Assembly (NCBI RefSeq): GCF_032444005.1
Contig: NC_091283.1
Location: 420,422,001-420,486,000, forward strand
Direction of reading: 5' to 3'
Length of the DNA stretch: 64,000 nt
From: Ranitomeya imitator
Lineage: Eukaryota
In this document: one piece after another, positions 1 to 64,000 of the stretch
Layout: every line of letters starts with the position of its first letter
Position numbering within the stretch: the first letter of the stretch is position 1
Program-made: the position numbers and the translations under genes
Notes under the pieces: model-generated
The model's input: only the letters and a program-made list of their open reading frames with translations
Told to the model about the DNA's origin: nothing
Databases searched by the model: none

Positions 1-2
1 TG

Positions 3-794
3 TTTTGCCGGCATTGCAGGAGGTACGGGCATACACAAGAAGCCTGTAAAATAGATGTTATATGCAGGAAATGCAATGAGGAGGGTCATCTCTCCTCTGA
101 GTGTAAAAACACCATTGTCTGCAACCTCTGTGGAGAGAAGGGGCACTCTTTCAGAGACTGTAAGTCACGTCCAGGTTCCTATGCAGCTGCAGCGGGGAGG
201 AGGAGAGCACAGTCTCCGGCTCGAGCAGGTACATCAGCGTCTGCACCACTGTCCACTGCGGCCTTCCTGGATGAAGAGGAGGCACAGGTTTGTTTTCCTG
301 AACAGGTTCGTGTAAACGAACGAGGAAATATGGAGTTGGCGCCTGAGCCTTTGGTACAGAAGGCTGTCTCTGTTGCCTCAGACGACAGCGATACTGAGAC
401 TGTAACTGGAGAAGGAGGTATGGAGGTATCCCTGGTGGGGGATTTTGATCCTGAAATGCTTGGCATGGCAGTCACATTGCAAGGGGAAGAGGAGATTGAT
501 TTGTCAAAAACACCAGGTGTTGATTGGGGTGCGGAGGTGTCAGACCCTGAGATGGAGGGAGGTCAGGGGGACTTTGACTTTCGGCGGAAAGACAGTAGCT
601 CTGATGAGGAGGGAGGTTCTTCTAAGAAGAAAAAAAAAGTGGAGCTATCTTTTTCTCCATTGAGTGACTCCAGTATGAGTCCAGCTCGGGTGTACCCTAC
701 TGCATCTGTTCCCCAAGGTGACTCTTTTTTAGGGGAAGGTGCGATTCTCGACTTCTGCACATCAAGCGCCCTGCCTCCAGAAGGGCTAGGATAA
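3..794 (+). CDS. E1 ORF1 (5'-partial): three CCHC zinc knuckles plus acidic tail
   Basis: Frame from base 3 reads FCRHCRRYGH..CRKCNEEGH..CNLCGEKGH and is in frame with track ORF 330..794. Confidence 0.9.
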   Translation, partial: FCRHCRRYGHTQEACKIDVICRKCNEEGHLSSECKNTIVCNLCGEKGHSFRDCKSRPGSYAAAAGRRRAQSPARAGTSASAPLSTAAFLDEEEAQVCFPEQVRVNERGNMELAPEPLVQKAVSVASDDSDTETVTGEGGMEVSLVGDFDPEMLGMAVTLQGEEEIDLSKTPGVDWGAEVSDPEMEGGQGDFDFRRKDSSSDEEGGSSKKKKKVELSFSPLSDSSMSPARVYPTASVPQGDSFLGEGAILDFCTSSALPPEGLG

Positions 795-840
795 TGCATA
801 AGTGGTTATGTTGTCGCACTTTGGGTCCCCAAATTGACAA

Positions 841-3800
841 ATGGTGTCTCTACATTCTCTCAGCGTATTGTCACTGAATGTAAGGCAAATTAAGTCTGTG
901 CCTAGGAGAGTGGCAATATTGGACTATCTGAGCAATCTGAATGCGGATGTGTATTGCATTCAGGAATGTGGGATTTCTGATCCCTTAAGTGACAACGTTT
1001 GGCCTTTGGGTCAGAGTGTGTGGTCTGGGTCGGTAGGTAATAAAAATTCTGGGGTGGGAGTTTTGGTGAATGGTAGAGGGGTTAAGGTGGAGAGTTACAC
1101 CGTGGTGGAAGCAGGAAGGTGTGTAATATGTGAGCTCAATTGTAAGGGTTGGAGGGTGAGGGTGGTTAACATGTATGCACCGGTAGATAAGGGGGAGAGG
1201 CTGGAGATTTTTGAGAAACTGAGTTATTTTTTATCTGGGAAAATGCCAGTAATTTTTGTTGGAGATTTTAATTGTGTGACGGAGGGGGATAAGATGGATA
1301 TTACAGGTAAAAGACTCAAGAGTCTTGTATCAGATTTTTCTTTTCAGGATGCTGCGGAGGTTATCCTTGGTAAGCCTCCTCCTGCGACCTATAAGGCTGA
1401 CAGGGGTGGTATAGAGTCTAGAATAGACCGTATTTTTTTCTCTCCAAATATTGTTTGTTGGGATTTCCAGCAGGAAGATGTCCCTTTTTCTGATCATGTG
1501 TATTTGAGAGCACGGTTGGAAGGTAAGTGTGATTTTGTGTATGGTGGAGGTGTGTGGAAGCTTAATGTGCGTTTGTTGGAAGATAAAAGAATTATGCGTG
1601 ACTTTAAAAGGATGTATGTAAGATGGAGGAGTAAAAAAAGTGATTTCGTGAATGTGCTTGAGTGGTGGGATTGGTTGAAGTGTGAGATTGGTATTTTCTT
1701 TAAAAAGTGGGGTAGGCGGAATGCTGCTATGAATAGGGCAAAATTTAATGAGTTAAGTGTCAGATTGGAGTGGTTACGAAAGTTGAGGATAATTGGAGTG
1801 GATGTGGATGATTTGATGTGTCAGGTGAAAGATGAAATTAAGAAATTTATTGAAGTAAAAGGTAAAGAAATAATTTTTCGTTCTAAAATTGAACATTTGG
1901 AAAAAAATGAGAAATGTACAAGGTTTTTTTTCAAAAAAGTGCTTGGTAAGAAAATGGATATGCATGAGGTGGTGAATGGTGAAGGTGTGTGTGTAAGTGG
2001 TAAAGATGTGATGGATGAGGTTGTGCTGTTCTATAAGGAGTTGTATGGGGAAAAATGGTTTGATGATCAGATGCTGAAGGATGTGTTGGGGTGTTTAAAT
2101 GGCCGATTGGGAGAGGATGAGTGTGGAATATTGGATGATGAAATTGTTTTGGATGAAGTTAAAAAAGTGGTTATGTCTGCTAGTAAGAATAAAACTCCGG
2201 GAAAAGATGGTTTGCCTGTGGAATTGTATGTGAAAGAATGGGATACGATTGGGGTCGACTTAGTGGAAGTGTGTCAGTATATGTTTAGGGAGAATGTGTT
2301 GAGTGATTCAATGAGAGAAGGAGTGGTGGTTCTGGTCTATAAGAAAGGTGATAGGAAGGATCTGGGCAATTGGAGGCCTATCACGCTTTTAAACGGTGAT
2401 TACAAGGTTTTTAGTAAGTTGTTGGCTAATCGAATGAGGGAAGTGGTTGGTGGTGTGGTGGATGAAGATCAAGTGTGTTCGGTGCCGGGGAGAAGTATGA
2501 CTGAGAATTTGGTTTTGCTGCGTGATGTGATTGGAGATTGTATGAGTCGTAAACAGAAATGTCTGGTTTTGTCAGTTGATTTTGAGAAAGCCTTTGACCG
2601 TGTGTCGCATAGTTTTATGTTTCATGTGTTGGCTAAGATGGGCTATTCGAGGAATTTTGTGAGCTGTGTTAGGAGTTTGTATAGTAATGTGACGAGTGAA
2701 TTTTTGGTGAATGGGTGTTTGAGTGATAAAGTGAGAATTAAGTCTGGAGTACGTCAGGGGTGCCCTATGTCCCCTATTTTGTTTATTAGCGTGATTGAGG
2801 TGTTGATGTGTATGGTTAGGAAGGATAAGGTTATGAGAGGTGTGTTGATTCCTGGGAGTGGTGGGAGGGATGTTAGGATTTTGGGTTATATGGATGATGT
2901 GGTGATAGTGAATGAGAGTATGGCTGCAATGAGTAGGGCAAGGTTGATATTAAGTCTGTTTTGTAGTGTGTCAGCCTTTAAGGTTAATTGGGCTAAGAGT
3001 TCTTTTAAATGTTTTGGTGATAGGAATGTTAGGATGGATGGTGTGAAATGTGAGGATGGTCCAATGAAGGTGCTTGGGATTAAGTTCAATGATGACTTGA
3101 AGGGAAATGAAAGTTGGGATGAGTGTGGGGAGAGAGTGGTGCGTAAATTGAATTTTTGGAGGTTAAGAGAATTGACTTTAACTGGGAAGGTCTTGATTAT
3201 TAAGGCGGTTATTTTTCCTATTTTGTTATTTGTTGGGAATGTGTATCCTACTGCGTTTGTGAAAATGAGGAAAACTGAGAAATTGATTTTTAATTTTCTC
3301 TGGGGAAGTCGCATGGAGAAATTGAAGCGGGAGTCTGTGTATAAGTTATGTGTGAATGGTGGCTTGAATTTTTTGAGTGTTGAGTTCTTTTTGGGGATTA
3401 GTTATGTGAAAATGTTTGTAGTATGTTTTGGGAAAGGTAATAAGTGTGCTTATATGATGAAGTATTCAGCCGGATGGATGTTGTATGGTTTGAAGTGGGT
3501 GAAAAGGGATGCAAGTGTGCCAGTTGCTTTTAAGTGTCCGATGTGGTATGCTTGTGTCGAGAAATTTGTTAGAAAGTATGATTTGTTGTCTGTTAGTATG
3601 AATGATTTTAGACAAAAAGGGAAAGTTGTTAGGATGGTGCGTGAGCGTGAGATTGCATGTGATATTAATGGATTGAGAGGTGAAGAGGTGCCAGAGATGT
3701 GGAAGAAATTAAGTATACAAGGTGTGACGAATAGACAGAGAGATATTGTTTGGATGATGTGGCATGATATTTTGCCTGTTAGGGATGTGCAAAAGAGGAG

Positions 3801-4221
3801 GGATTTAATTAAATCCGAGGTGTGTCCGAGGGATGGATGTGGTGCGAGAGAGCATGTTAGACATCTGGTTTGGGACTGTGATTTTGCGTATGCTGTATGG
3901 AAAGGTATAGGTGGTCTTTGTAAGGAATTGGCTGGTGTATCGTATCTTAATTGGAAGCTTGCTATGTTTGGAATGGGTGCATGTAGTAGGGTGAAGGATA
4001 GGATTTTATGGCTGTTGGTTGTATGTGTAATTGAAAGTATATGGGATGCGAGGAATTTGTTAGTTTTTAAAAGGAAGAAGATGTCTGTTAATGAATGTTT
4101 GAGTTTGATTCTGTCACGTATGTATGTGATTTACCTGTGGGACCAGAAACGAGGAAGTTTTATTGATGCTGAAGGGGTCTGGAAATTCAAGAAGTGGAGG
4201 TTTCTTGTGAAATTTAATTAG
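841..4221 (+). CDS. E1 ORF2: APE endonuclease, reverse transcriptase, C-terminal CCHC (1126 aa, intact)
   Basis: SLNVR, IQEC, GDFN, SRID, FSDH; WRPITLLN, DFEKAFD, QGCPMSP, YMDD; CPRDGC..H..WDC. Confidence 0.97.
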   Translation: MVSLHSLSVLSLNVRQIKSVPRRVAILDYLSNLNADVYCIQECGISDPLSDNVWPLGQSVWSGSVGNKNSGVGVLVNGRGVKVESYTVVEAGRCVICELNCKGWRVRVVNMYAPVDKGERLEIFEKLSYFLSGKMPVIFVGDFNCVTEGDKMDITGKRLKSLVSDFSFQDAAEVILGKPPPATYKADRGGIESRIDRIFFSPNIVCWDFQQEDVPFSDHVYLRARLEGKCDFVYGGGVWKLNVRLLEDKRIMRDFKRMYVRWRSKKSDFVNVLEWWDWLKCEIGIFFKKWGRRNAAMNRAKFNELSVRLEWLRKLRIIGVDVDDLMCQVKDEIKKFIEVKGKEIIFRSKIEHLEKNEKCTRFFFKKVLGKKMDMHEVVNGEGVCVSGKDVMDEVVLFYKELYGEKWFDDQMLKDVLGCLNGRLGEDECGILDDEIVLDEVKKVVMSASKNKTPGKDGLPVELYVKEWDTIGVDLVEVCQYMFRENVLSDSMREGVVVLVYKKGDRKDLGNWRPITLLNGDYKVFSKLLANRMREVVGGVVDEDQVCSVPGRSMTENLVLLRDVIGDCMSRKQKCLVLSVDFEKAFDRVSHSFMFHVLAKMGYSRNFVSCVRSLYSNVTSEFLVNGCLSDKVRIKSGVRQGCPMSPILFISVIEVLMCMVRKDKVMRGVLIPGSGGRDVRILGYMDDVVIVNESMAAMSRARLILSLFCSVSAFKVNWAKSSFKCFGDRNVRMDGVKCEDGPMKVLGIKFNDDLKGNESWDECGERVVRKLNFWRLRELTLTGKVLIIKAVIFPILLFVGNVYPTAFVKMRKTEKLIFNFLWGSRMEKLKRESVYKLCVNGGLNFLSVEFFLGISYVKMFVVCFGKGNKCAYMMKYSAGWMLYGLKWVKRDASVPVAFKCPMWYACVEKFVRKYDLLSVSMNDFRQKGKVVRMVREREIACDINGLRGEEVPEMWKKLSIQGVTNRQRDIVWMMWHDILPVRDVQKRRDLIKSEVCPRDGCGAREHVRHLVWDCDFAYAVWKGIGGLCKELAGVSYLNWKLAMFGMGACSRVKDRILWLLVVCVIESIWDARNLLVFKRKKMSVNECLSLILSRMYVIYLWDQKRGSFIDAEGVWKFKKWRFLVKFN

Positions 4222-4259
4222 TGCCTTGTTGGTGTATTTGTGTTTTTATTTTGTATATA

Positions 4260-4346
4260 TACCATGCATGATGAAGGCTGAGTATCATTTGAAGCTTTTT
4301 TAAGCGGATTTGATCGAGCATTGTGCTCTGCCTATCTGATTTGGTA
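4260..4346 (+). other. Putative box C/D kink-turn hairpin in E1 3' UTR
   Basis: ATGATGA 4268-4274, CTGA 4336-4339, outer stem TACCA/TGGTA, inner stem AGGC-GAG/CTC-GCCT. Confidence 0.55.
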
Positions 4347-4358
4347 AAAAAAAAAAAA

Positions 4359-4509
4359 ATCTGTTCTTATCAGTTTAATATCTGATACGTCCCCTATTTG
4401 GGGACCATATATTAAATGGATTTTTAGAACAGGGAGCTGGAAATGGAGCTTGCTCTGTCCACTCCACGCATTGACCCGTTATTGCAGTATCTCCGGGAAC
4501 AGTGCACCC
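4359..4509 (+). ncRNA. RNU2: U2 snRNA 3' fragment (nt 38-188), array variant A
   Basis: ATCTGTTCTTATCAGTTTAATATCTGATACG...GTGCACCC; Sm site; 3' box follows. Confidence 0.97.
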
Positions 4510-4522
4510 CTTCTCTGATCCG

Positions 4523-4537
4523 GTTTCCAAAAACAGA
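4523..4537 (+). terminator. snRNA 3' box (repeated 14 nt after every U2 3' fragment: 10885, 17453, 24387, 31117, 37846, 44601, 51671, 60168)
   Basis: GTTTCCAAAAACAGA or GTTTCTAAAAACAGA matches GTTTN0-3AAARNNAGA. Confidence 0.9.
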
Positions 4538-5422
4538 TTGAATTGAAATCAGCCCAGCAAGTTGTCATTTAACACTTTCTGAGAATTCTTTTCAGGGTCA
4601 AAGAAGCACGTTTCAGGTGGCAAATGTAGCAATTTGCTCAATTTCACTGGACCGTTTGCAACATTTCCTGTGCCTTGCTTTCACCTGTGCATGTTCAGCA
4701 TTGGATTGCATCCAATATGCAATCAATCAATCAATCAAGCAATCAATCAAGCAATCTTTGCTGGTTGCAACAGGTGTGTTAAGATGTAGGCCCGAATGAG
4801 GCCTTTGTAACAGTGTTGCTAATATATTGTGCCATCTACAAAATTAGGCCCCTGCCTGCTGTCTGTCAGCATGAAGTGTTTAAATTGAAGTATCCTACGA
4901 GTAGTTCGGCCATACATACTACATTTGTGACCGCATGCACAAATTCCCTTGTAAAACATTGGCTCCCTCTTGTGGACCACTACTGACTTTTAATTATGTG
5001 GTGTATGATATGTATTTCAATAAAGAAGGAAAAATGGTGTCTGTGATGGATGATCTTGAATGTGCTAGTCTTGTCTATTTTGTCTTGTACTGTGTGAGTA
5101 GTATTCTAATGCTTTTGACCAACTAGGTGCGCTGCTGCCTGCCTGCCTGCCTGCCTGCAGTAGATAGAATCTGTGCACGGAACCTTCACCTGCTGCTGCT
5201 GTCACAATGGGGCCTTCAGCCATTGACTCCGGAACTCTCACGTGTCACAATGGGCTCTGGACCTATCTAAGGCAGAGAAAAATGGCGCCGTCTTCAGTCT
5301 GCTGCTGGAACAGCAGCAGACCACATGGTAGGGGGATTGTCTTTTTTTTAAAGGGGCAATTTGCAGACTTGCACTAATAGTTGCACTCTGGAGCGCCAAA
5401 GGGATGGAGGGTGTGTTCAGAT

Positions 5423-5683
5423 GGGCGGAGTTATGCAGATCAGGCGGAGTTATGCAGATTAGGCGGAGTTAGGCAGATTTTTTTAAAACGCGTTGGGCCC
5501 AACTTGAACACACCCCCACACACCCCCCACACACCCCCACACACACCAGAACTGCCATTTGAGAAGGCATCCAGAGTTTAGAAAAAAAATGTCTTCCCCT
5601 GGGCAATCATCTTTTGGGCTCTCTCCAGAGTGAGTCCTGGTTGTAGGCCATGGGGCGTCCGGAGTGGCAAACCATTTCAGGCT
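5423..5683 (+). promoter_or_regulatory. U2 promoter: DSE (3x GGCGGAGTTA[T/G]GCAGAT, 5423-5478) and PSE (~5621-5640)
   Basis: GC box plus octamer-like ATGCAGAT at about -260 to -205; CTCTCC-type PSE at about -63 to -44. Confidence 0.85.
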
Positions 5684-5705
5684 ATCGCTTCTCGGCCTTT
5701 TGGCT
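5684..5705 (+). ncRNA. RNU2: U2 snRNA 5' fragment (nt 1-22)
   Basis: ATCGCTTCTCGGCCTTTTGGCT, then diverged. Confidence 0.95.
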
Positions 5706-5850
5706 CAGATATCACGTCTGGCCAGAAGGATTCTAAGCCAATCTTGCCCTTGGCCTTGAGGCATCGGCGGTGTAAAAGCCGTCTTAAGCCTCATGCTGCT
5801 TTAGGGGGCAGATACGCAAAGAAACCAGGAAGGCGATCGACCCTTTGAAG

Positions 5851-7269
5851 ATGGCATCAGCAGTAGCGGCCTCAGTGCGCTATGCCAGAGCTGGTGACCT
5901 TCGCATCAAGAACTCATTCAAGATTGAAGTGGACGATGCATCTAAGGAGAAGATGACCTTGAAGTTTTTCGTGAGGAGAGTACTGCTGGAGATCCTGGGA
6001 GTAAGGAGGGAGGACATCCTGGCTCTTCAAGATCGCCCGGGATCTTTCACTTTGACTTTGGAGTCGGAGCATGCGTGCCAGAACCTCTTCCTCCAGATTC
6101 ATCAGCACCTTACAGATGAAGACCTAAAAGGACTTACCTTTGTCATCCTATACTCCGGTGGAGAGAAGCCACTCGTTGTTCAAATGAGCAATCCTCATGT
6201 TCCCTTAGTCCATATTATTTGCTTTCTTCAGAATTATTTTCCGGATCTGCGGTATTCCCACAAGGTCATGAATGAAGAGAACCTTTGGACGGGGAAGCAT
6301 AAATTTTTTGTTAAATTTTGTGAGGATGCGAGTGGTATTGGTGGTCAACGGCACCCCCCATCGAGTTTCCTGATTGGCAGAGAGCGGGGGCGGCTCTTCT
6401 ATCCGGACATGCCCCTCTTCTGTCGAAAATGCATGAGGTTTGGTCACACCTATGAGAACTGTGCTGAGGAGGTGGCAATTTGTAAGAAGTGCTACCAGCA
6501 CAGACATGCTACAATGGACTGCACTAATGAGATGGTGTGTAATATCTGTCGGGTCCCGGGTCATTCCTTCCGGGAGTGTCCCTTGAAGAAAAGGGCCCAA
6601 ACTTATGCTGAAACACTGAAGCAGCCGCCCATAATGCAGAGACGTTCCACCACTGCTCCCGCAGCTGCGTTCTTAACGCGGGGGCAGTCTTCCAGTATTC
6701 CAGTACCTGCTACTGATACATCTGCACCTGTTGCACTAGAGAAGCCTGCCAGCTCGTCTGCTGTGCAGGGGTGTTCTGCGGGTGATCCTGTGACTGCGGT
6801 ACGAGCACAATCTTCTGCAAGCAAGTCTATTGCCGCTCCGGCACCTTCTGCTCAGGAAAAACCTCCTGCTGCGCAAGAACTTCCAGCTGAGAATTCTGAC
6901 CCTGCTGAAAAGGGGGGTGCTTCACCTGATTGGTCTGCTAACCCTGATCCGGATGGTATGATGGTGATAGCAGAGGGAGGACCCCCTGCTGAAGCCACAA
7001 GCTCTGACTCGGAGGATGAGGCAATGGAGCTGGAAACACGAAGAAAAAGGAAGTCAGAAGACGGGCCTGGAGGTAATGTGGCCAAGGAGGCTTCCAAGAA
7101 GTGTCCTTTGAGGCCAAGTATCCTGCAATTTAAGCCCAAGCCTCCTGCTGCTCCTCCTGAGGAACCAAGGCCTTCAGATCCTGTGAACATCCTTTTTTCA
7201 GATTCTGAGGTGCAGAGCCCATTAACACCTGTGGGCTTTATGTCTGATTCTGACAGCAGTGTGACCTGA
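5851..7269 (+). CDS. E2 ORF1 zinc-knuckle nucleic-acid-binding protein
   Basis: CRKCMRFGH, CKKCYQHRH, CNICRVPGH; A/P/S-rich tail. Confidence 0.9.
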   Translation: MASAVAASVRYARAGDLRIKNSFKIEVDDASKEKMTLKFFVRRVLLEILGVRREDILALQDRPGSFTLTLESEHACQNLFLQIHQHLTDEDLKGLTFVILYSGGEKPLVVQMSNPHVPLVHIICFLQNYFPDLRYSHKVMNEENLWTGKHKFFVKFCEDASGIGGQRHPPSSFLIGRERGRLFYPDMPLFCRKCMRFGHTYENCAEEVAICKKCYQHRHATMDCTNEMVCNICRVPGHSFRECPLKKRAQTYAETLKQPPIMQRRSTTAPAAAFLTRGQSSSIPVPATDTSAPVALEKPASSSAVQGCSAGDPVTAVRAQSSASKSIAAPAPSAQEKPPAAQELPAENSDPAEKGGASPDWSANPDPDGMMVIAEGGPPAEATSSDSEDEAMELETRRKRKSEDGPGGNVAKEASKKCPLRPSILQFKPKPPAAPPEEPRPSDPVNILFSDSEVQSPLTPVGFMSDSDSSVT

Positions 7270-7280
7270 GCTGTCTCATC

Positions 7281-13781: not shown

Positions 13782-13786
13782 CATAA

Positions 13787-54635: not shown

Positions 54636-54671
54636 ATCGCTTCTCGGCCTTTTGGCTAAGATCAAGTGTAG
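54636..54671 (+). ncRNA. RNU2: U2 snRNA 5' fragment (nt 1-36)
   Basis: Same junction as E4. Confidence 0.95.
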
Positions 54672-54894
54672 GATTTTCTTGCATTTGGTCGAAGTCCTTT
54701 AGGTGCCTGGGGTACCCCGCCTCTCGGCCTTGGGTGCGGGTCCCACTCTTGTAGTGGGATCCAATCCCTTGTTGCTATAGGGAGGTGGGCTTAGTCCCTA
54801 GGCAACGAGTTGCGATCGCCCTAGCCAGATAGTCTTTGGATTACTTGGTGCCTTTCCTTGTTGCGGAACACCCCCGTTTTTTTTCCTTATAACC

Positions 54895-56358
54895 ATGGAC
54901 CCAGATCCTGGTGATGTTCCAACCTATGCTCTGCTAAAGCATACGGTTCGGATTTATTTTGAGAAAGGTGGAGGAGATGGCCGTGGACTAAAATTCGTGG
55001 TTGGCAATGTTCTGGAGAAGGCTCTTTCAGTCCGGAAACACGAAATCCTGGCCATCCAGGACTATCCAAGACGCGGTGTCTATGATGTTACTTTTACCGG
55101 AGAAGGTATCCATCAGCATGTTTGTAACCAGGTCATCTCCCCTGATGTGATTATCCAGAAAAACCCTGAACTTAAAGGGGTTAAATTTGCTATCCATGAT
55201 TTAGAAGAGACCAGGCTCTTGATTGTTAAAATTTATTCACCCCATATGCAAGACAGTGAAATCGGAAGATACCTGTTGGGTTTCTTCAAAAAAGTCAATT
55301 GTTTGGGGAAGATTTTGAATGAATGCGGCATTTGGACCTCCAAATGGAGATATGTTGTAACCTGTGTCAAAAATGCCTCAAAACCTGGAGGAGTAGATTT
55401 ACCACCAGCTCGTTTTAAAATTGGCAAAACGAATGGCGACCTCTATTTTAATGGCATGCCGTCCTTCTGTAGAAAATGTAAACTATATGGGCATTCAAAT
55501 TGTGACCCGACCTGTGCAAAATGTGGGAGCCAGGAACATAAAACCGAGCAATGCCAGACAGAGAATATGTGTACAAATTGTCTTGCAAAAGATCATTCTT
55601 TTTCCTTTTGTCCTAACAGGAAAAACACAAAAGGAGCACAACCCGAGAAGGAACAGCCTCCGGCCCCCTGCCAACCCTCGGCTGGTTCTGCTGTCCCCAA
55701 AACAAAGGAGGATGAGGAGGAGTCGATGGACGAGTCGAATGAGGTACCTGGTACAGGTAAGGATGGCTACACTGAAGTGAGGAATGAGAAAGCGAGACGC
55801 AGGAGGGAACGGCAGAAGGAGAGCAGGCAGCAGAAAGAGGACCCCGCAGAGGGTACAGCCGCTTCTGCAAAAAGCCAACCCTTGTCTCTGCGATCTTCCG
55901 GGACGGCTCAAGGGCGCGGAAAATCGGACCCAAAAAGGCGGAAAGTCCAGGAGAAAACAGGTGGTGCATCAAGGGAAGTACACCCACAGGAACCCCCTGA
56001 TGGAGGTGGGAAACCCGAGGAGATGCCCATGGAGGAGCGGGCAACCCCACCCTCTTCAGAGATGGAGAGGGGGTCTGGGGTGGCTGCCTCAGCCATTCCT
56101 GTAACTCCGGTCAGAGGACAGCCGGCACCCGAGCTCGATCTGACCCCTCCGATTGGTCCCCTGGAGGGGGGGCCGGTGGGAGATCAGGAGCAGGGATGGG
56201 AGTCGGCCTACCTGACAAATAAGGTCTTATTTATGGAGAGTGAGCTCGTCCCGGAAAGTGTAATGCCATCCGAAGCCCAGTCTGATGGAGAGTCCTCCGA
56301 GATCTCTTCCCTCATGACCGTCGCCGACAAGACTGAACCCTCCGATGAGGACATATAA
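54895..56358 (+). CDS. E9 ORF1 (487 aa)
   Basis: As E4 ORF1. Confidence 0.9.
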   Translation: MDPDPGDVPTYALLKHTVRIYFEKGGGDGRGLKFVVGNVLEKALSVRKHEILAIQDYPRRGVYDVTFTGEGIHQHVCNQVISPDVIIQKNPELKGVKFAIHDLEETRLLIVKIYSPHMQDSEIGRYLLGFFKKVNCLGKILNECGIWTSKWRYVVTCVKNASKPGGVDLPPARFKIGKTNGDLYFNGMPSFCRKCKLYGHSNCDPTCAKCGSQEHKTEQCQTENMCTNCLAKDHSFSFCPNRKNTKGAQPEKEQPPAPCQPSAGSAVPKTKEDEEESMDESNEVPGTGKDGYTEVRNEKARRRRERQKESRQQKEDPAEGTAASAKSQPLSLRSSGTAQGRGKSDPKRRKVQEKTGGASREVHPQEPPDGGGKPEEMPMEERATPPSSEMERGSGVAASAIPVTPVRGQPAPELDLTPPIGPLEGGPVGDQEQGWESAYLTNKVLFMESELVPESVMPSEAQSDGESSEISSLMTVADKTEPSDEDI

Positions 56359-56406
56359 GCCAGCTGAGGTAAGAGTTTTTGAATTTCGTACCTTTTATTT
56401 TCTCTT

Positions 56407-59400
56407 ATGGCGGGGATCTCTGGAAAATCCCTCAACGTTAGAGGGATTAAAACAAAACCCAGGAGGTTGGCGCTCTTTGAGTTTTTGTACACTTTGTCGG
56501 CATCAGTTATCTTCTTACAGGAATGCAATATTCCACACTCTTTAAATTATAATAAGTATAAAACAGATTGGACACATGGACCCTCAGTGTGGTCAGGATC
56601 AAATGAATCCAGGTCAGCAGGGGTCGCCATTCTTTTTAAAGGTAATGTTTTTATTGACTCAGTTCAGGAGGTTTTACCAGGCAGGATTTTATTGGTTAAA
56701 GCTTTTATTGATGGTTTTAAATGGCAGTTTTTAAATTTTTATGGATCTACTGAGAAAAATGAAAGAGCAAAAATGTTAGAAATGTTACCCCTTTTTATTA
56801 ATGATTCTGATCCTCTTATTTTAGCAGGTGATTTTAATTGTATTATGGGTGGGGAGAAAAGATTCTCCAATGCGGTAAGCAGAAACTACGATAAAACCTC
56901 TTTTATGCTCAGAAACGTTGTGCAGGATTTTAAACTTATCGATTGTTTCAAGGAATGCAATATGAATCTCCCTGCTGAAGAGTGGGTAACCTGGAGCAAT
57001 GTGAACTGTAGCTCCAGAATTGATTTTATTTTTTGTTCTAATTCCATACTGCCTTTTAAATGTGAGCTTTTAACCAATGTCTTTTCAGACCATAAACTTT
57101 TACTTTTTAATGTTAATTATGATGATTTTAAGAAAAAAGGTAAAAGTGCCTGGAAACTAAATGTCTCTCTCTTAGATGATCCAGAAATTTTAACCAGTTT
57201 TACGGAATTTTATACAAATTGTAAACAAACTAGAGATCCCCGTACCCCTATTAGTAGGTGGTGGGAAAAAATGAAGAAAAATATTAAAAATTTCTTTATT
57301 AAAGCTGGAGTACAAAAAGCTAAAGAAAAGAGAGAGATTTACAACCTCCTAAATACCCGACTGCAAACCCTCTATAAACTACGTGAGCACGACATTGATG
57401 TGGATAAAGATATTTGTAATCTTAAAACTGAAATATCAAGATGCTTGGAACAAAGGGGGAAGCAATTAATCTTTCACTCAAAAGTCAAGCATATAGAAGA
57501 GAATGAAACCTGTTCCCGTTATTTCTTTAAAAATATGGTCGGAAAAAGGGTATTTATTAATTCTTTGGAGGGAGAAAATGAAATAGAGGGAATTTTAAAT
57601 AAAGTCCACCAATTTTATGCTGACCTTTTTAATAAAAAAGTTATAGACAATAGTTTTATGGAAAGCTCTATGGAGGAAATCACAACCATTTTACACCCAG
57701 TGTCACAAAACTTTTTATTGCAGGACCTGAGCAAGGAAGAGGTGGCTGAAACAGTGAAAAGTTTTAAACCAGGAAAAGTCCCCGGGCCAGACGGTATCCC
57801 CATAGAATTTTATTCCAGTTTTTATGAGCTTTTACAAGAAGATCTTTTAAATATTTTAAGTGAGGTTTTTAATACAAAAACTCTCCCCACCTCTTGGAAA
57901 AAGGGTGAGGTTTCCCTTATATACAAAAAAGGGGACAAAACGGACATAAAAAATTGGAGACCAATAACCCTTTTAAACTGTGACTATAAAATAATGGCCA
58001 AAATTTGTGCAAACAGACTCAAAAAAGTGGTGGGAAACATAATACATCCTAACCAGGTCTGTGGTATACCAGAGAGAAGCATATGGGAAAACCTAAATTT
58101 AATTAAAGACATAATTGATGACACTAAATCAAGGGGAGGTGGAATGGCGGTCTTATCCCTTGATTTTGAGAAAGCTTTTGATAGAGTATCTCACGAGTTC
58201 CTTTTTAATGTTTTAAATAAAATGGGTATACCAGAAGGGTTTTTAGAGTCACTTAAGGCATTTTATAAAGATTGCACAAGCAAGATTGTGATAAATGGTT
58301 TTAAAACTAAAGACGTTGTTTTAAAATCTGGGGTTAAGCAGGGTTGTCCCCTGTCCCCACTTTTATTTATTTGTGCTCTTGAACCCCTGCTATGTGCCCT
58401 GAGGAGGGATAAACAAATCCGGGGAATCCCACTGCCTGGTGGAGGAGGTCTGGAGGCTAAAGTCACAGGGTATATGGATGATGTAGCCATAATATGCAGG
58501 GATTCTCCTTCTATACAAAAAGCCTTAAGGCAGGTGGAGTTTTTCTGCTGTGGGTCTGGTTTTAAATTAAATTTTAATAAAAGTTCTATTTTTAAGGTTG
58601 GCAATGTGGTTTTAACAGATATCCAAGTTCCTGAGAGGGACTCTGTTCAAGTTTTAGGTGTAATTTTTAATGAAGAAAATAAAGGCACAGAAAGCTGGAA
58701 TATGGTGGCTCAGAAGGTAAACCAAAAGCTGTGTATGTGGAATTTGAGAAAAATGACTATGGAGGGGAAAATTTTAATTATTAAAATGGTCATATTGCCG
58801 CTTTTATTATATTTAAGCCTGGTCTTCCCCCCTCCAAACGGCATTTTTAACAAAATAATTAAAGCTTGTTTTACCTTTTATTGGAGTTCCAAGATGGAAA
58901 AACTAAAAAGAGAGCTGGTGGTAAAATCCAAAGGTAATGGTGGCAAAGACTTCCCAGATTTTAGAGCTTTTGTTTTAATCCGTTTCTTTGTCCTGTGTTT
59001 TAATTCCCTTTTTAAAAATAGTTACTGGTCATATTTTATACGTTTTAACATTGGTTTTTTTATGAGACGCCTTGGGTGGTTTGAAACAGTTTTAAATTCC
59101 CCATATGCTTTTAACACACCCGAAAACTATAAAATCTTAGGTACCATTGTTAACACATATGACCTAAAGGGTATAAACACAGAGGCCCTAGGGGATAGCA
59201 AAAAGATCCTAAAGGGCCTCAAAGGAAAAGAACAAGTGACGCAGATTGGAAACTTTAATGATCCTAAGTGTTTAGAGATTTGGAAAAATGTTAATGCCTC
59301 GTATCTTTTTAATTCCCAGAAGGACCTGGCCTGGAGCTGTGTGCATGATTGTCTTCCATGCCGGGCATTCCAGCACCGAAGAGGACTCGTGAGATCCGCC

Positions 59401-59790
59401 AAGTGCCCAAGAGAGGACTGCCAAAGGGAAGAAACAGTGCTGCACATTCTTTGGACTTGTCAATTCACAAGAAAAATATGGACAAAATTTTTCCCTTTAC
59501 TCCAGAAAATAACTGATTTGAAAGACTTAAGTTTTGAGACTGTTTTGTTTGGATGCATGGAATGCCCCAACGCAACTAAGAGGATCATCGCATGGAAGAC
59601 AATCAGCACCATCAAAGAAGCTCTATGGAAGGCCAGGAACATCCTTCTTTTTAAACATGATGTTTTATCTGTGAAAGACGTTTTATCATTGGCTTTTAGT
59701 GAAATGTATATTTATTATTTATTGGACAAGAAAAAGAATCTTTTATTGTCAACGCAATGGATGGTAGAAGAGTGGAATACTATAATTTGA
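56407..59790 (+). CDS. E9 ORF2 APE-RT-CCHC (1127 aa, intact)
   Basis: As E4 ORF2. Confidence 0.97.
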   Translation: MAGISGKSLNVRGIKTKPRRLALFEFLYTLSASVIFLQECNIPHSLNYNKYKTDWTHGPSVWSGSNESRSAGVAILFKGNVFIDSVQEVLPGRILLVKAFIDGFKWQFLNFYGSTEKNERAKMLEMLPLFINDSDPLILAGDFNCIMGGEKRFSNAVSRNYDKTSFMLRNVVQDFKLIDCFKECNMNLPAEEWVTWSNVNCSSRIDFIFCSNSILPFKCELLTNVFSDHKLLLFNVNYDDFKKKGKSAWKLNVSLLDDPEILTSFTEFYTNCKQTRDPRTPISRWWEKMKKNIKNFFIKAGVQKAKEKREIYNLLNTRLQTLYKLREHDIDVDKDICNLKTEISRCLEQRGKQLIFHSKVKHIEENETCSRYFFKNMVGKRVFINSLEGENEIEGILNKVHQFYADLFNKKVIDNSFMESSMEEITTILHPVSQNFLLQDLSKEEVAETVKSFKPGKVPGPDGIPIEFYSSFYELLQEDLLNILSEVFNTKTLPTSWKKGEVSLIYKKGDKTDIKNWRPITLLNCDYKIMAKICANRLKKVVGNIIHPNQVCGIPERSIWENLNLIKDIIDDTKSRGGGMAVLSLDFEKAFDRVSHEFLFNVLNKMGIPEGFLESLKAFYKDCTSKIVINGFKTKDVVLKSGVKQGCPLSPLLFICALEPLLCALRRDKQIRGIPLPGGGGLEAKVTGYMDDVAIICRDSPSIQKALRQVEFFCCGSGFKLNFNKSSIFKVGNVVLTDIQVPERDSVQVLGVIFNEENKGTESWNMVAQKVNQKLCMWNLRKMTMEGKILIIKMVILPLLLYLSLVFPPPNGIFNKIIKACFTFYWSSKMEKLKRELVVKSKGNGGKDFPDFRAFVLIRFFVLCFNSLFKNSYWSYFIRFNIGFFMRRLGWFETVLNSPYAFNTPENYKILGTIVNTYDLKGINTEALGDSKKILKGLKGKEQVTQIGNFNDPKCLEIWKNVNASYLFNSQKDLAWSCVHDCLPCRAFQHRRGLVRSAKCPREDCQREETVLHILWTCQFTRKIWTKFFPLLQKITDLKDLSFETVLFGCMECPNATKRIIAWKTISTIKEALWKARNILLFKHDVLSVKDVLSLAFSEMYIYYLLDKKKNLLLSTQWMVEEWNTII

Positions 59791-60003
59791 ACGCTACCAT
59801 AAATGTAAATTATTGGCCGATGCTTGTATATTACTTGTTTTTACTGCATGTAACATTGGAAGAAAAAAAAAAAAAAATCTGATTGATAAGTTATAAATGC
59901 TTTAAATATGTAATACACTGTATACATACGTCTTTTATCTGTAATTGCTTTTAAAACTTTAATAAACGGGTGTACCTAAATGTGGGTACTTCCAAGTTAA
60001 AAA

Positions 60004-60154
60004 ATCTGTTCTTATCAGTTTAATATCTGATACGTCCCCTATTTGGGGACCATATATTAAATGGATTTTTAGAACAGGGAGCTGGAAATGGAGCTTGCTC
60101 TGTCCACTCCACGCATTGACCCGATATTGCAGTATCTTCGGGAACAGTGCACCC
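60004..60154 (+). ncRNA. RNU2: U2 snRNA 3' fragment (nt 38-188)
   Basis: Variant B sequence. Confidence 0.97.
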
Positions 60155-61169
60155 CTTCTCTGATCCGGTTTCTAAAAACAGATTGAATTGAATTGAAATC
60201 AGCACAGCAAGTTGTCATTTAACCCTTTCGGAGAATTCTTTTCAGGGTCAAAGAAGCACGTTTCAGATGGCAAATGTAGCAATTTGCTCAATTTCACTGG
60301 ACCGTTTGCAACATTTCCTGTGCCTTGCTTTCACCTGTGCATGTTCAGCATTGGATTGCATCCAATATGCAATCAATCAAGCAATCAAGCAATCTTTGCT
60401 GGTTGCAACAGGTGTGTTTAGATGTAGGCCCGAATGAGGCCTTTGTAGCAGTGTGGCTAATATATTGTGCCATCTACAAAATTAGGCCCCTGCTGTCTGT
60501 CTGTCTGTCAGTATGAAGTGTTTAAATTGAAGTATCCTACGAGTAGTTCGGCCATACATACTACATTTGTGACCGCATGCACAAATTCCTTTGTAAAACA
60601 TTGGCTCCCTCTTGTGGACCACAGACTTTTAATTATGTGGTGTATGATATGTATTTAAATAAAGAAGGAAAAATGGGGTGGGTCTGTGATGATCTTGCTT
60701 GAATGTGCTAGTCTTGTCCATCTTGTCTTGCACTGTGTGAGTAGTATTCTAATGCTTTTGACCAATTAGGTGCGCTGCTGCTGCCTGCAGTAGATAGAAT
60801 CTGTGCACGGAACCTTCACCTGCTGTCACAATGGGGCCTTCAGCCATTGACTCCGGAACTCTCACGTGTCACAATGGGCTCTGGACCTATCTAAGGCAGA
60901 GAAAAATGGCGCCGTCTTCAGTATGCTGCTGGAGCAGCAGCAGACCACATGGTAGGGGGATTGTCTGTCTGTGCCCAGCTTCAGGGCAGCTGGCAAGACA
61001 ACTGCTAGCCCGTCTGGTGTTTGAATTACACACTCGCTCTGCCCGTTTCTTGAATAGCCCTCTTTACCTTGACAAGTCAGCTGGTATGTCACTCTCCATC
61101 CATCAGGAGGAACGTTACCCCTTAGACCCCAGTCCAGTGCCTCTCACTTAGCCAAATCAGTTCTCTTGC

Positions 61170-61214
61170 TTCGCACTGACGAGGGCCAAGAGCCCTAAAC
61201 ACCGTGTCTGCAAA
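61170..61214 (+). ncRNA. Hammerhead fold, G12U, one stem I mismatch
   Basis: 3' strand of stem I reads TGCAAA. Confidence 0.68.
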
Positions 61215-61318
61215 TTGAGATGCTGTTGTTTTTTGTTTTTTTTGTAAAGGGGCAATTTGTAGACCTGCACTAATAGTTGCACTCTTTAGCGCAAAAGGGA
61301 TGGAGGGTGTGTTCAAAT

Positions 61319-61547
61319 GGGCGGAGTTATGCAGATTAGGCGGAGTTATGCAGATTTCAAAAACGCGTTGGGCCCAACTTGAACACACCCCCACACACCC
61401 CCCACACACACCAGAACTGCCATTTGAGAAGGCATCCAGAGTTTAGAAAAAAATGTCTTCCCCTGGGCAATCATCTTTTGGCCTCTCTCCACAGTGGGTC
61501 TTGGTTGCAGGCCATGGGGCGTCCGGAGTGGCAAACCATTTCAGGCT
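61319..61547 (+). promoter_or_regulatory. U2 promoter (DSE + PSE)
   Basis: Copy of 18601-18829. Confidence 0.85.
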
Positions 61548-61568
61548 ATCGCTTCTCGGCCTTTTGGC
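61548..61568 (+). ncRNA. RNU2: U2 snRNA 5' fragment (nt 1-21)
   Basis: Exact match, then degenerate ACGATCTGTAGT. Confidence 0.93.
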
Positions 61569-61782
61569 ACGATCTGTAGTGGATTGTGGCATTAGGCTAA
61601 TGGTGTGTGTAGTGAAAGTTCTGATTCTTGGCCTCGTGGAGATATCCCTTGCTGCTATTGGGAGTCGGTTTGGAAGCTGCAGTACCTTTTTTCCCGGAGG
61701 ACGGTGTGTTGGAGGTGGACCCGATCTGTGGAGGCTGCGATCGAATTGCTTGTTCCAGTGTAATCTGTGACCAAGAAGAAGA

Positions 61783-63333
61783 ATGGAGTCGAGGAGGTAT
61801 GGCGGAGGAGGGAGGTTTGAGAGAAATGAAGAAAACCTGGATTTTTTTTCGGAGGACTATCCCTTGAAGGATACTATTCGTTTTTTTGTTTCTCCTGGAT
61901 ACCGGCAGGTAAAGGATTCCGGTTATATTTATGAAAATATTTTTTCCCAGGTTTTGAAGGTAGAGAAAGGAGTATTTTTCTGCTTTCAGTCTTTTTACTC
62001 AAGGGGCATTTATGATGTGACTCTAGTGAGCAATGCCCTGTGTGAGACAGTGCTTTCTCTTTATGAAGCGAATAAGGAGAATGAAGTTTTTGAGGGGATA
62101 AAAGTAATCCCCTCTTTTCAGTTTTCAATGAAGTTACTGACAATACACATGTTTAGTCCGTTCATCTCTGAGCAGGAGGTGGAGTCTTACTTGTATCCTT
62201 TTTGTGATAAGGTGATCATGAAAAATACGGTAAAGACAAACTTTGGAGTCTGGAATGGTAAAAGGGTTTACCGTGTGTCTTTTAAAAAGGACCCAGAAGA
62301 AGAAGGTGGAGTTATGAGGCCTCCGCCGTCGGTGTTCATCAATCGATGTCGTGGCTATCTTTTTTTCTCAGGTATGCCTGATTACTGCAGGAAATGTCGG
62401 AAATATGGACATGGTGAAAGCAAGTGTAATCGGTGTCAGAGGTGCCCGACAGCTCATCAAGAGTCCGAATGTCCAAAAAATAAGGATAGCGCAGAGAAAA
62501 TGGATACATCTGCAGAGGAAGAAAAAACTAAAGCGGGTGAGGAGGAGAAAGAAGAAACAAAGGAGCAGGAAGTGGTGATTGAGATGAGTGATAAGGAAAA
62601 CGAAGAAAAACAAGGGAAAGAAGAAGAGGAGAAGAAGAATCTGGAGGAAAAAGGAAAATTAGAAGAGGAGATCGAGAAGAGAGAGGAAGAGAAGGAGACA
62701 GAAGAAGAAGAGAAGATGGAAGATAAGATTTTAGAAGACAAGAAGAAAGAAGAGAGAAGAAGAAAGGAGGAAGAAAGAAGAAGGAAGAGGGAAGAGGAAA
62801 GAATTAAGGGAGAGGAAGAAAGAAAGAGAACAGTAGAAAAAGTTAAAAAGAGGATGGAAGAGAATATAAGGAAGGGAGATGGTAAACAGATGATTGAAGG
62901 CATTGGAAGAATTGTGCAGAAGGCATTAGGAGTAGGTCCAAAGGAGGCGAGTAAGTTGCAGGCCTCTTTAAAAATTAAGGACCCCAAAGAAGAAAAGAGC
63001 GCTGAAGAAAAAAGAATAAGTAAGGGGACTGAAGGAAAACCTTTACTTACAGTAGATCCTTCGCCTCCATCTTCCTTGTCACAGAGCTTTCCAAGTGCAC
63101 AGGAGGAGATGGAGTGTCAAGCAAGGTCTTTAAAGAGAGGAGTAGAAAAAGATGTTGTGGAGGAGGTTCCCCATTGGGGAAAAATTAAAGCAGTAGAAGC
63201 AAAGAGTTCAGAGTTGATTGGAGAATTGTCATCGTCAGAAACATCAGCTGCTGAGGATTTGGTGATAGACTCAACTTCTCCAGCAGAAAATGAGGGCGAG
63301 GGGTTTAGCCCTATGTTGAAAACTAAAAGATGA
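61783..63333 (+). CDS. E10 ORF1 (516 aa) with reduced knuckle region and long E/K/R tract
   Basis: CRKCRKYGH, CQRCPTAH; N-terminal domain aligns by eye with other ORF1s (WNGKR, RGYLF). Confidence 0.88.
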   Translation: MESRRYGGGGRFERNEENLDFFSEDYPLKDTIRFFVSPGYRQVKDSGYIYENIFSQVLKVEKGVFFCFQSFYSRGIYDVTLVSNALCETVLSLYEANKENEVFEGIKVIPSFQFSMKLLTIHMFSPFISEQEVESYLYPFCDKVIMKNTVKTNFGVWNGKRVYRVSFKKDPEEEGGVMRPPPSVFINRCRGYLFFSGMPDYCRKCRKYGHGESKCNRCQRCPTAHQESECPKNKDSAEKMDTSAEEEKTKAGEEEKEETKEQEVVIEMSDKENEEKQGKEEEEKKNLEEKGKLEEEIEKREEEKETEEEEKMEDKILEDKKKEERRRKEEERRRKREEERIKGEEERKRTVEKVKKRMEENIRKGDGKQMIEGIGRIVQKALGVGPKEASKLQASLKIKDPKEEKSAEEKRISKGTEGKPLLTVDPSPPSSLSQSFPSAQEEMECQARSLKRGVEKDVVEEVPHWGKIKAVEAKSSELIGELSSSETSAAEDLVIDSTSPAENEGEGFSPMLKTKR

Positions 63334-64000
63334 TCCGTATGGCTTCCCTGAATGTTCAGGGGCTTAATGACTTGTACAAAAGGACAGCCTTGTATGATTA
63401 TTTTAATAATGAAAATCTTGATTTTATATTTCTACAAGAGTGCAATCTGACAAAGAAACTAAGTTATGATTATTTACGGGGGATATGGAATGGTAATTTT
63501 TGCTTCTCAGGGGGTAATGAATCAAAGAGTGATGGGGTGGGTTTTTTATGCTCTCGAGAGTGGGAAATTACCAACTATGAAGAAATATACCCAGGAAGGA
63601 TCTTAAGAGTAGATGTGGAAAAAGAGGGGAAGAAATTAAGGTGTTTTAATGTGTATGCTAATACTGATAAGGCTTTAAGGTTACATTTGTTTGAGATTTT
63701 GCAATTATTTTTACCTGGAGTGGATCCAATAATTCTAGGTGGAGATTTTAATTGCCGAGTAAAGAATATGAAGGATGGATCGTCTTCGTGCTTAAGAGGT
63801 ATTTTATCTGCTTTTAATCTTAAAGATGTTTGGTGGCTTAATGGACATAAAAGTGAATATGAAGTTACTTGGGTAGGGAGAGGTTTTTCCTCTAGGATAG
63901 ATTATGTTTTTATATCCGAGGCATTTACTTGTTCAGATTTTAAAACACATGAAACACCTTTTTCTGACCATAAAATTTTAGACTGTACATTAGCGTTTGA
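63330..64000 (+). CDS. E10 ORF2 (3'-partial), APE endonuclease domain
   Basis: MIRMASLNVQG, FLQEC, GGDFN, SRIDY, FSDH; ATG overlaps ORF1 stop (ATGA). Confidence 0.93.
   Translation, partial: MIRMASLNVQGLNDLYKRTALYDYFNNENLDFIFLQECNLTKKLSYDYLRGIWNGNFCFSGGNESKSDGVGFLCSREWEITNYEEIYPGRILRVDVEKEGKKLRCFNVYANTDKALRLHLFEILQLFLPGVDPIILGGDFNCRVKNMKDGSSSCLRGILSAFNLKDVWWLNGHKSEYEVTWVGRGFSSRIDYVFISEAFTCSDFKTHETPFSDHKILDCTLAF

What the first reader, a model, noticed from the sequence alone, without database searches (positions are those of the whole stretch)
1..64000. U2 array fully colonised by eight coexisting site-specific retrotransposon families
Seen: all nine 3' junctions are element|ATCTGTTC (U2 nt 38). 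No uninterrupted U2 occurs in 64 kb. Ten elements belong to eight clearly divergent families, one per unit, all in the same orientation. Known: Tx1-clade Keno elements target this U2 site in fish and Xenopus, as do RLE-type Utopia elements. Inference: this is a multi-family retrotransposon niche sharing one target and one borrowed promoter. Complete occupancy with this much family diversity is unusual, and functional U2 must come from elsewhere.
Basis: partly seen in the sequence, partly recalled or inferred. Interest (0 to 1): 0.75.

Follow-up and report, generated by a model that had tools for sequence, protein, structure and literature searches.

The report
Frog U2 genes all split by LINEs
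In this stretch of a poison-frog chromosome, every one of nine tandem U2 snRNA genes is split at the same base by a full-length Keno-type jumping gene. The ten insertions belong to eight anciently separated lineages, an unusually crowded case of a known kind of target-specific parasite.

Summary
The window holds nine U2 units (1.35-1.6 kb without insert). Each is split at U2 nt 37/38, and no intact U2 is present. There are ten insertions: eight complete (5.0-5.5 kb, none 5'-truncated) and two cut by the window ends. All lie in U2 orientation.

All ten are APE+RT LINEs with an ORF1 of two RNA-binding domains. They sort into eight lineages with ORF2 identity of 35-51%. The closest pair of families is 75% identical, with dN/dS about 0.1 and dS about 1.2.

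In trees they sit in one clade with Xenopus tropicalis RT proteins, sister to a fish clade. An AU test rejects a frog-specific radiation (p = 1e-19). The lineages are therefore old, while the insertions are young: spacers differ by 0.2-0.6%, seven U2 3' halves are identical, and four of nine ORF2s are intact.

Each family carries its own decayed copy of U2 nt 23-37. This supports transcription from the U2 start.

"Fully colonised array" is not shown. A Ranitomeya imitator gene model points to a ninth family elsewhere.

Verdict: new Keno families, with unusual local saturation and diversity.

The parts
1..4358 (+). E0: Keno-like element, 5' end cut by the window. Family 1, group B.
   Evidence: ORF2 841-4221 is intact (1126 aa) with APE+RT+zf-RVT. 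It is 47% identical in protein to E4/5/6 and 36-40% to the others. The sense strand is 8% C. It ends in a poly(A) run at the U2 nt 38 junction.
4359..5705 (+). S0: U2 3' half (from nt 38) + 3' box + spacer + promoter + U2 nt 1-22. Variant spacer type.
   Evidence: S0/S1 differ from S2-S8 by about 45-49 substitutions and about 350 gap columns. The U2 3' half has 2 substitutions against the main type, plus 1 in the 3' flank.
5706..10720 (+). E1: full-length element (5015 nt). Family 2, group A.
   Evidence: ORF1 is 472 aa from its ATG. ORF2 is split by one frameshift into 7281-9437 and 9362-10669. Protein identity to other families is 38-48%.
10721..12074 (+). S1: remainder of a U2 unit, variant spacer type.
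12075..17288 (+). E2: full-length element (5214 nt). Family 3, group A. Both ORFs intact.
   Evidence: ORF1 lies in 12252-13781, with two ZCCHC3-type RNA-binding domains and a CCHC knuckle. ORF2 13787-17170 is 1127 aa with APE+RT+zf-RVT. It is sister to X. tropicalis proteins P0002/P0003 at 60% identity. It has no poly(A) tail at the junction.
17289..18851 (+). S2: remainder of a U2 unit, main spacer type.
18852..24222 (+). E3: full-length element (5371 nt). Family 4, group A. Both ORFs intact.
   Evidence: ORF1 lies in 19030-20571 and ORF2 20620-24003 is 1127 aa. It is 98.9% identical to E8. U2 nt 1-36 are intact upstream. Its ORF1 is 98.6% identical to residues 406-893 of R. imitator XP_069599577.1.
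24223..25807 (+). S3: remainder of a U2 unit. The 3' box is at about 24387-24402, the GC box and octamer-like repeats at about 25547-25585, and a PSE-like block at about 25720-25737.
   Evidence: Sequence read. The motif assignments rest on general knowledge of vertebrate snRNA promoters and were not tested.
25808..30952 (+). E4: full-length element (5145 nt). Family 5, group B. Defective.
   Evidence: It has a TAA stop at element nt 2181 inside APE, shared with E5, plus two private 1-nt indels. It is 99.7% identical to E5.
30953..32536 (+). S4: remainder of a U2 unit, main type.
32537..37681 (+). E5: full-length element (5145 nt). Family 5. Defective.
   Evidence: It carries the same premature TAA stop as E4. 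ORF1 is 437 aa.
37682..39264 (+). S5: remainder of a U2 unit, main type.
39265..44436 (+). E6: full-length element (5172 nt). Family 6, group B. ORF2 related to E4/5, but the ORF1 and 5' UTR are unrelated.
   Evidence: ORF2 is 75% identical in protein to E4/5, with two frameshifts and one stop. ORF1 is only about 30% identical, and DNA homology starts at the ORF1/ORF2 boundary. For E6 vs E4, dN is 0.12 and dS 1.18.
44437..45997 (+). S6: remainder of a U2 unit, main type.
45998..51506 (+). E7: full-length element (5509 nt). Family 7, group A. Defective.
   Evidence: ORF1 is frameshifted. ORF2 has one stop and one frameshift. It is 51% identical to E2. U2 nt 1-37 lie upstream with one mismatch.
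51507..54657 (+). S7: remainder of a U2 unit, main type, carrying an extra Tc1-like insertion.
54658..60003 (+). E8: full-length element (5346 nt). Family 4. Both ORFs intact.
   Evidence: ORF1 is 54895-56358 and ORF2 56407-59790 (1127 aa). It differs from E3 by 36 substitutions and three indels.
60004..61569 (+). S8: remainder of a U2 unit, main type.
61570..64000 (+). E9: element cut at its 3' side by the window end. Family 8.
   Evidence: ORF1 61783-63333 is intact (516 aa). The APE fragment of 222 aa has no stop and is <=38% identical to all others. There is no DNA-level hit to any other element.

Best explanation
This is part of a tandem U2 snRNA gene array of a dendrobatid poison frog, probably Ranitomeya. 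Every visible unit has been hit by a Keno-type site-specific LINE of the Tx1 group: an ORF1 with two RNA-binding domains, with a CCHC knuckle in some families, and an ORF2 with APE, RT and a zinc domain.

Shown:
- The insertion point is the same in all nine 3' junctions (U2 nt 37/38).
- All eight complete copies are full length.
- The ten copies represent eight lineages that separated long ago under purifying selection.
- At least two lineages have separate sister lineages in Xenopus tropicalis.

Inferred:
- The APE nicks the bottom strand at the U2 site, and reverse transcription is primed there.
- The RNA template is a transcript started by the U2 promoter at or near U2 +1, so each family carries its own mutated copy of U2 nt 23-37 as a leader.
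- The U2 leader on the cDNA pairs with the upstream half of the target. This gives uniform, untruncated 5' junctions without target duplication.
- The insertions are recent compared with the age of the lineages.
- This window is a locally saturated block. Working U2 genes must lie elsewhere, in the same array or at another locus.
For: Site and layout.

Domains.

Divergence.

Phylogeny: the window families plus X. tropicalis RT proteins form one clade with 100% support. It is sister to a fish clade that includes Danio BAC82621 and a mudskipper protein, with Tx1/YTX2-like proteins outside. Monophyly of the window families is rejected by the AU test (p = 1.4e-19).

Purifying selection: between the two closest families, dN is 0.12 and dS 1.18.

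Young insertions: spacers S2-S8 differ by only 3-10 substitutions in about 1560 nt. The U2 3' halves are identical in 7 units. ORF2 is intact in E0, E2, E3 and E8, and the other copies carry 1-3 lesions.

Leader: U2 nt 1-22 are identical in eight of the nine units (1-20 before E9). The bases after that differ by family but are the same in E3/E8 and in E4/E5.

Literature: the Keno site lies 37 nt into U2 with the same 3' flank, and Keno is known from frogs (PMC6136364, PMC4640811). In R2, upstream target sequence kept on the RNA gives uniform 5' junctions (PMC3774820).
Against: - No RNA evidence was obtained, so the U2-promoter transcript and the homology-guided 5' joining are inferences.
- snRNA-type promoters are not known for making 5-kb messages (general knowledge).
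- E4 and E5 share an inactivating stop. At least one copy therefore arose by DNA-level duplication or by trans-mobilisation, not by autonomous insertion.
- No Repbase or Dfam Keno sequence could be placed in the tree. The label 'Keno' rests on the target site, the domain set and clustering with unnamed X. tropicalis and Danio proteins.
- The species assignment rests on earlier notes and on one R. imitator protein at 98.6% identity.
Confidence: 0.8

Rival explanations
1. The whole U2 array is saturated. Essentially no empty units are left in this array, and functional U2 snRNA comes from a separate locus.
For: Nine of nine consecutive units are inserted, and the array continues beyond both window ends. 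If units were independent, 9/9 would imply occupancy above about 72% at 95% confidence (own arithmetic). An R. imitator gene model joins the APE of a further family to an E3-family ORF1, consistent with neighbouring occupied units elsewhere.
Against: - Only nine units are visible.
- In rDNA, inserted units lie outside an insertion-poor domain, so consecutive units are not independent samples (PMC3542110).
- Young insertions of many families need a recent supply of empty sites.
- The identical U2 3' halves suggest continuing exchange with intact genes or very recent disruption.
Confidence: 0.25
2. The insertions are old and spacer-only gene conversion hides their age. The elements were inserted long ago and the near-identity of the spacers is due to short-tract conversion that skips the inserts.
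For: The spacers and U2 halves are almost identical, while E3 and E8 differ by about 0.7% in substitutions (36), or 1.1% counting gap columns. That is somewhat more than their flanking spacers.
Against: Four of nine 3.4-kb ORF2s are intact and the defective copies carry only 1-3 lesions. That does not fit long neutral decay. E4/E5 differ by 0.27%, the same order as the spacers.
Confidence: 0.1
3. An inserted unit was amplified at the DNA level and the copies then diverged in place. In that case this would be a satellite of one dead inserted unit, not many insertions.
For: E4 and E5 are adjacent, 99.7% identical and share a premature stop.
Against: Families differ by 50-65% in protein while their flanks differ by <0.6%. 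Family divergence shows purifying selection. The families interleave with Xenopus lineages. This can account for E4/E5 at most.
Confidence: 0.03
4. The pattern is an assembly artefact. Reads from dispersed inserted U2 pseudogenes were chained into an artificial array.
For: The region is repetitive and the spacers are near-identical.
Against: Each unit carries a different 5-kb element, and private spacer variants are consistent with a resolved long-read assembly. Public runs of the same and related species hold parts of the stretch. This could not be checked with reads.
Confidence: 0.03

Closest known systems
Keno (Tx1-group APE-type LINEs specific for U2 snRNA genes; Kojima and Fujiwara 2004; Repbase entries from fish, frogs, lancelet and hydra, as cited in PMC4640811, PMC4494074 and PMC6136364)
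   Same: The target gene, insertion point (37 nt into U2) and 3' flank are the same. Both have an APE+RT ORF2 and insert in the orientation of U2. The window families cluster with X. tropicalis and Danio RT proteins.
   Different: Eight lineages, plus a ninth hinted at in R. imitator, sit side by side, and nine of nine units are occupied. The best database identities are only 41-60%. I found no paper that describes multi-lineage coexistence or local saturation for Keno, though my search was limited.
Utopia (RLE-type U2-specific LINEs; PMC4640811)
   Same: The 3' junction in U2 is the same. In Phytophthora, U2 arrays hold different Utopia families, and several lineages have been kept for a long time.
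   Different: Utopia has a restriction-like endonuclease and a single ORF. Here all ten elements have an APE and an ORF1. In Phytophthora the 5' U2 fragment is deleted and intact U2 genes lie between insertions. Here the 5' fragment is kept and no intact gene is seen.
R1 and R2 in rDNA arrays (PMC3581529, PMC3542110, PMC3774820, PMC2718515)
   Same: Both are site-specific LINEs in a tandem multigene family. Multiple old lineages coexist. Both depend on the host gene's transcription. Upstream target sequence on the RNA gives uniform 5' junctions, and inserted units tend to cluster.
   Different: The target here is a Pol II snRNA gene. No ribozyme was detected by Rfam in one full element. All eight complete copies are full length, whereas many R2 copies are 5'-truncated.

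Membership tests
Keno | Insertion in U2 snRNA genes about 37 nt from the U2 start, followed by the published 3' flank | tested here: met
   Nine of nine 3' junctions fit. The site and flank are as quoted in PMC6136364 and PMC4640811.
Keno | APE-type endonuclease plus RT in ORF2 (not RLE) | tested here: met
   Pfam finds Exo_endo_phos + RVT_1 + zf-RVT in E0, E2 and E3. APE-homologous N-termini are present in all ten elements.
Keno | RT phylogeny places the element with curated Keno entries inside the Tx1 group | tested here: inconclusive
   The elements cluster with unnamed X. tropicalis RT proteins and Danio 'pol-like protein' BAC82621, with YTX2-like (Tx1) proteins as the outer group. No Repbase or Dfam sequence was available, and the name of BAC82621 could not be verified.
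Tx1 group of LINEs | ORF1 with RNA-binding (RRM-like) domains and CCHC knuckle | tested here: met
   Both ZCCHC3-type RNA-binding domains were found in all four ORF1s scanned. The CCHC knuckle was detected in E2 and E4 but not in E3 or E9.
Utopia | Restriction-like (PD-D/ExK) endonuclease C-terminal to RT, single ORF | tested here: not met
   All elements have an N-terminal APE and a separate ORF1.
Host-promoter-dependent site-specific LINE (R2-like life style) | Transcript starts in the host gene. Upstream host sequence is carried on the RNA. | tested here: inconclusive
   Family-specific decayed U2 nt 23-37 leaders and unbroken promoter motifs fit this. No RNA data could be obtained.

The most novel reading that the evidence does not exclude
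The U2 array is saturated, and turnover happens by replacement of residents. A new element could be primed at the retained U2 3' half-site of an already occupied unit. The U2 leader on its cDNA would then pair with the U2 5' stub about 5 kb upstream and swap out the old element.

This would explain four features: 100% occupancy, exactly one element per unit, no 5' truncation, and many lineages persisting without a standing pool of empty sites.
Probability: 0.1. Interest if true: 0.8.

Novelty: new member of a known kind. Interest (0 to 1): 0.55.

Why it matters
U2-specific LINEs are known, but U2 genes have been regarded as a poor, low-copy niche (PMC4640811). Here one frog locus carries at least eight lineages of one target-specific group, each young as an insertion but ancient as a lineage. 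The closest pair of families already shows a synonymous divergence (dS) of about 1.2, and some lineages have separate Xenopus sister lineages.

That gives a vertebrate counterpart to the R1/R2-rDNA system for three questions:
- How do competing parasites share a single target?
- How much disruption can a multigene family tolerate?
- Can an snRNA promoter drive a 5-kb retrotransposon RNA?

It also gives a panel of natural APE/RT enzymes that recognise one conserved site.

Tried and rejected
- **Reads test.** After that I sent no U2 letters to any search tool: the Rfam search and the reads of sequence stayed beside the U2 parts. Only local scripts handled the spacers and U2 halves.
- **Sequencing runs.** All runs found were Logan contigs under coded organism names, and none is on record as RNA. 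I drew no expression evidence from them.
- **Neighbouring windows.** The search of earlier findings does not accept coordinates outside the window, and a word search for Keno found nothing.
- **Ribozymes.** An Rfam search at permissive E-value across all of E2 outside its U2 parts gave no ribozyme or other family.
- **Accession name.** Accession BAC82621 occurs in no searchable paper, so I could not confirm its element name.
- **G-rich skew.** Tandem repeats do not explain the strong G-over-C skew of some elements. It is the base composition of ORF2 itself.
- **Mixture-model tree.** It did not finish in time. The trees reported use LG+G4.
Full report
**Layout**

Rfam finds nine U2 matches, all on the + strand. 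An exact 16-nt motif that starts at U2 nt 38 occurs nine times, against 0.02 expected by chance. A 20-nt U2 5'-end motif also occurs nine times. The full nt 1-37 is present with at most 3 mismatches at only three places.

Reading the flanks shows the order of each repeat:
- U2 3' half;
- 3' box and spacer with promoter;
- U2 5' stub;
- a 5.0-5.5 kb insert;
- the next U2 3' half.

In the two Rfam alignments shown, the first ~37 model positions are stretched over element tail sequence, and the raw flanks show the same for all nine. No uninterrupted U2 exists in the window. The insert-free units are 1347-1585 nt. S7 is 3151 nt because of a separate DNA transposon.

**What the inserts are**

All long ORFs lie on the + strand. 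ORF2 is about 1127 aa and carries an APE-type endonuclease, an RT and the zf-RVT domain. ORF1 carries two ZCCHC3-type RNA-binding domains, and a CCHC knuckle in two of the four ORF1s scanned. Every element, including the two cut by the window ends, has the APE-homologous N-terminus. These are therefore APE-type LINEs, not RLE-type Utopia.

The site agrees with published Keno data. Keno inserts 37 nt into U2 and is followed by the same flank (PMC6136364). Keno and Utopia share that 3' flank, and Keno is known from frogs, fish, lancelet and hydra (PMC4640811, PMC4494074).

**How many families**

At the DNA level:
- E3 and E8 are 98.9% identical.
- E4 and E5 are 99.7% identical.
- E6 matches E4/5 at 76%, and only from the ORF1/ORF2 boundary onward.
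- All other pairs are <=66% identical over short stretches, or have no hit.

At the protein level:
- ORF2 identities between groups are 35-51%, and 75% for E6 vs E4/5.
- The E9 APE fragment is <=38% and its ORF1 <=32% identical to all others.
- The E6 ORF1 is only about 30% identical to that of E4/5, so E6 looks like a recombinant of two lineages.

**Age of the lineages**

In trees of ORF2, all window families fall in one fully supported clade. The clade also contains four X. tropicalis RT proteins and several unnamed proteins from public read assemblies. It is sister to a fish clade (Danio BAC82621 and a mudskipper protein), with Pleurodeles and Tx1/YTX2-like proteins further out.

- E2 is sister to X. 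tropicalis P0002/P0003 at 60% identity.
- E3/E8 is sister to P0005 (X. tropicalis) plus P0001.
- Forcing the window families into one clade costs 429 log-likelihood units (AU p = 1.4e-19). I named the group after seeing a first tree, which weakens the formal p-value but not the size of the effect.
- Between the two closest families (E6, E4), dN is 0.12 and dS 1.18. Even these diverged over a long time as working genes.

If inheritance was vertical, several lineages predate the split between pipid and neobatrachian frogs. That is an inference.

**Age of the insertions**

- Spacers S2-S8 differ pairwise by 3-10 substitutions in about 1560 nt. S0 and S1 form a second spacer type about 3.5% away.
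- The U2 3' halves with their 3' box are identical in seven units. The other two differ at three positions.
- ORF2 is intact in E0, E2, E3 and E8.
- ORF1 and ORF2 are both intact in E2, E3 and E8.
- The E9 ORF1 is intact.
- The defective copies carry one to three lesions each.

In-place divergence of a duplicated unit cannot produce 50-65% protein difference inside flanks that differ by <0.6%. Most units were therefore hit separately and recently. The exception is E4/E5. These share a premature TAA inside APE, so one arose by DNA duplication or by mobilisation in trans.

**Mechanism (largely inferred)**

Upstream of every insert, U2 nt 1-22 are identical to U2 (nt 1-20 before E9). After that the bases differ by family:
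- E3/E8 keep nt 1-36.
- E7 keeps nt 1-37 with one change.
- E1, E2, E4/5, E6 and E9 each have their own decayed version of nt 23-37.

Copies of one family share the same version. The simplest reading is that the element RNA starts at or near U2 +1 and carries the U2 leader. The leader on the cDNA then pairs with the target's upstream half.

This would explain three features: no target duplication, at most a 1-2 nt loss, and eight of eight complete copies being full length. The same logic has been proposed for R2 elements whose RNA keeps upstream 28S sequence (PMC3774820).

The spacers keep a GC box and octamer-like repeats at about -240 to -200, a PSE-like block at about -60 and a 3' box after the U2 3' half. 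The 120 nt before the U2 start are identical in six of the seven main-type units, and one unit differs by 2 nt. I assigned these motifs from general knowledge of snRNA promoters.

No Rfam ribozyme was found in one full element. No RNA data could be obtained.

**What is not shown**

The title claim that the array is fully colonised rests on nine units of an array that runs off both ends of the window. In rDNA, R2-inserted units lie outside a contiguous insertion-poor domain (PMC3542110), so a saturated block next to an empty block is a likely alternative.

From then on I sent no U2 letters to search tools.

**A hint from outside the window**

R. imitator protein XP_069599577.1 (P0023) is a gene model with two parts:
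- Residues 406-893 are 98.6% identical to the E3 ORF1.
- Residues 1-411 are an APE region at most 54% identical to any window family.

This fits a neighbouring pair of occupied units elsewhere, with a ninth family. It also supports the frog assignment made in earlier notes.

**Comparison and verdict**

The elements meet the tested defining features of Keno: site, APE+RT and ORF1 type. The tree test against curated Keno entries could not be done.

Coexistence of several lineages at one target is known for R1/R2 (PMC3581529) and for Utopia in Phytophthora U2 arrays (PMC4640811). In Phytophthora, intact U2 genes are interspersed.

I found no description of this degree of lineage diversity and local saturation for Keno or for any vertebrate snRNA array, but only six literature searches were run. 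I rate it as new members of a known kind, with an unusual population structure and moderate-to-good interest.

Noticed in passing
window 51963-53548 (within spacer S7): A 1.56-kb Tc1-like DNA transposon remnant sits in the spacer. It has perfect 203-nt terminal inverted repeats (203/203) and a TA duplication. A 181-aa ORF on the - strand (52244-52789) looks like the C-terminal part of a Tc1-type DDE transposase (by eye; no domain search was run). The empty site is visible in the other spacers, so the insertion is very young.
   Followed up: partly
window 841-4218, 27499-30759, 34135-37488, 40881-44260 (ORF2 of E0, E4, E5, E6): The sense strand of the coding sequence is extremely depleted of cytosine: 6-8% C, GC skew 0.60-0.70, and 5% C at third codon positions in the intact E0 ORF2. 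The other families have 15-18% C. ORF1 and the 5' UTR of the same elements are much less skewed. The cause is unknown; strand-specific deamination pressure or an adaptation are possibilities.
   Followed up: partly
window 39265-40880 vs 25808-27410: E6 shares its ORF2 with the E4/5 family (75% protein identity), but its 5' UTR and ORF1 are unrelated (about 30%). DNA homology starts at the ORF1/ORF2 boundary. This looks like modular recombination between co-resident families.
   Followed up: partly
window 5725-5900, 12095-12270, 18870-19045, 25826-26000, 46016-46190, 61590-61790: A 5' UTR block of about 120 nt is conserved across six otherwise very divergent families (75-79% identity between E2, E3 and E7, well above ORF-level DNA identity). 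It includes a stretch that resembles part of the U2 5' stem-loop region. Rfam gives no match.
   Followed up: partly
R. imitator protein XP_069599577.1 (P0023), not in the window: This annotated 'uncharacterized protein' is a chimeric gene model. It joins the APE of one Keno-like family to the ORF1 of the E3 family. This suggests adjacent occupied U2 units elsewhere and at least a ninth family.
   Followed up: partly
window 4359-5705 and 10721-12074 vs the other seven spacers: The array has two spacer types, about 3.5% apart in substitutions and about 350 gap columns apart. The two units of the minority type are adjacent and carry 2 substitutions in the U2 3' half. The array is therefore not fully homogenised.
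   Followed up: partly
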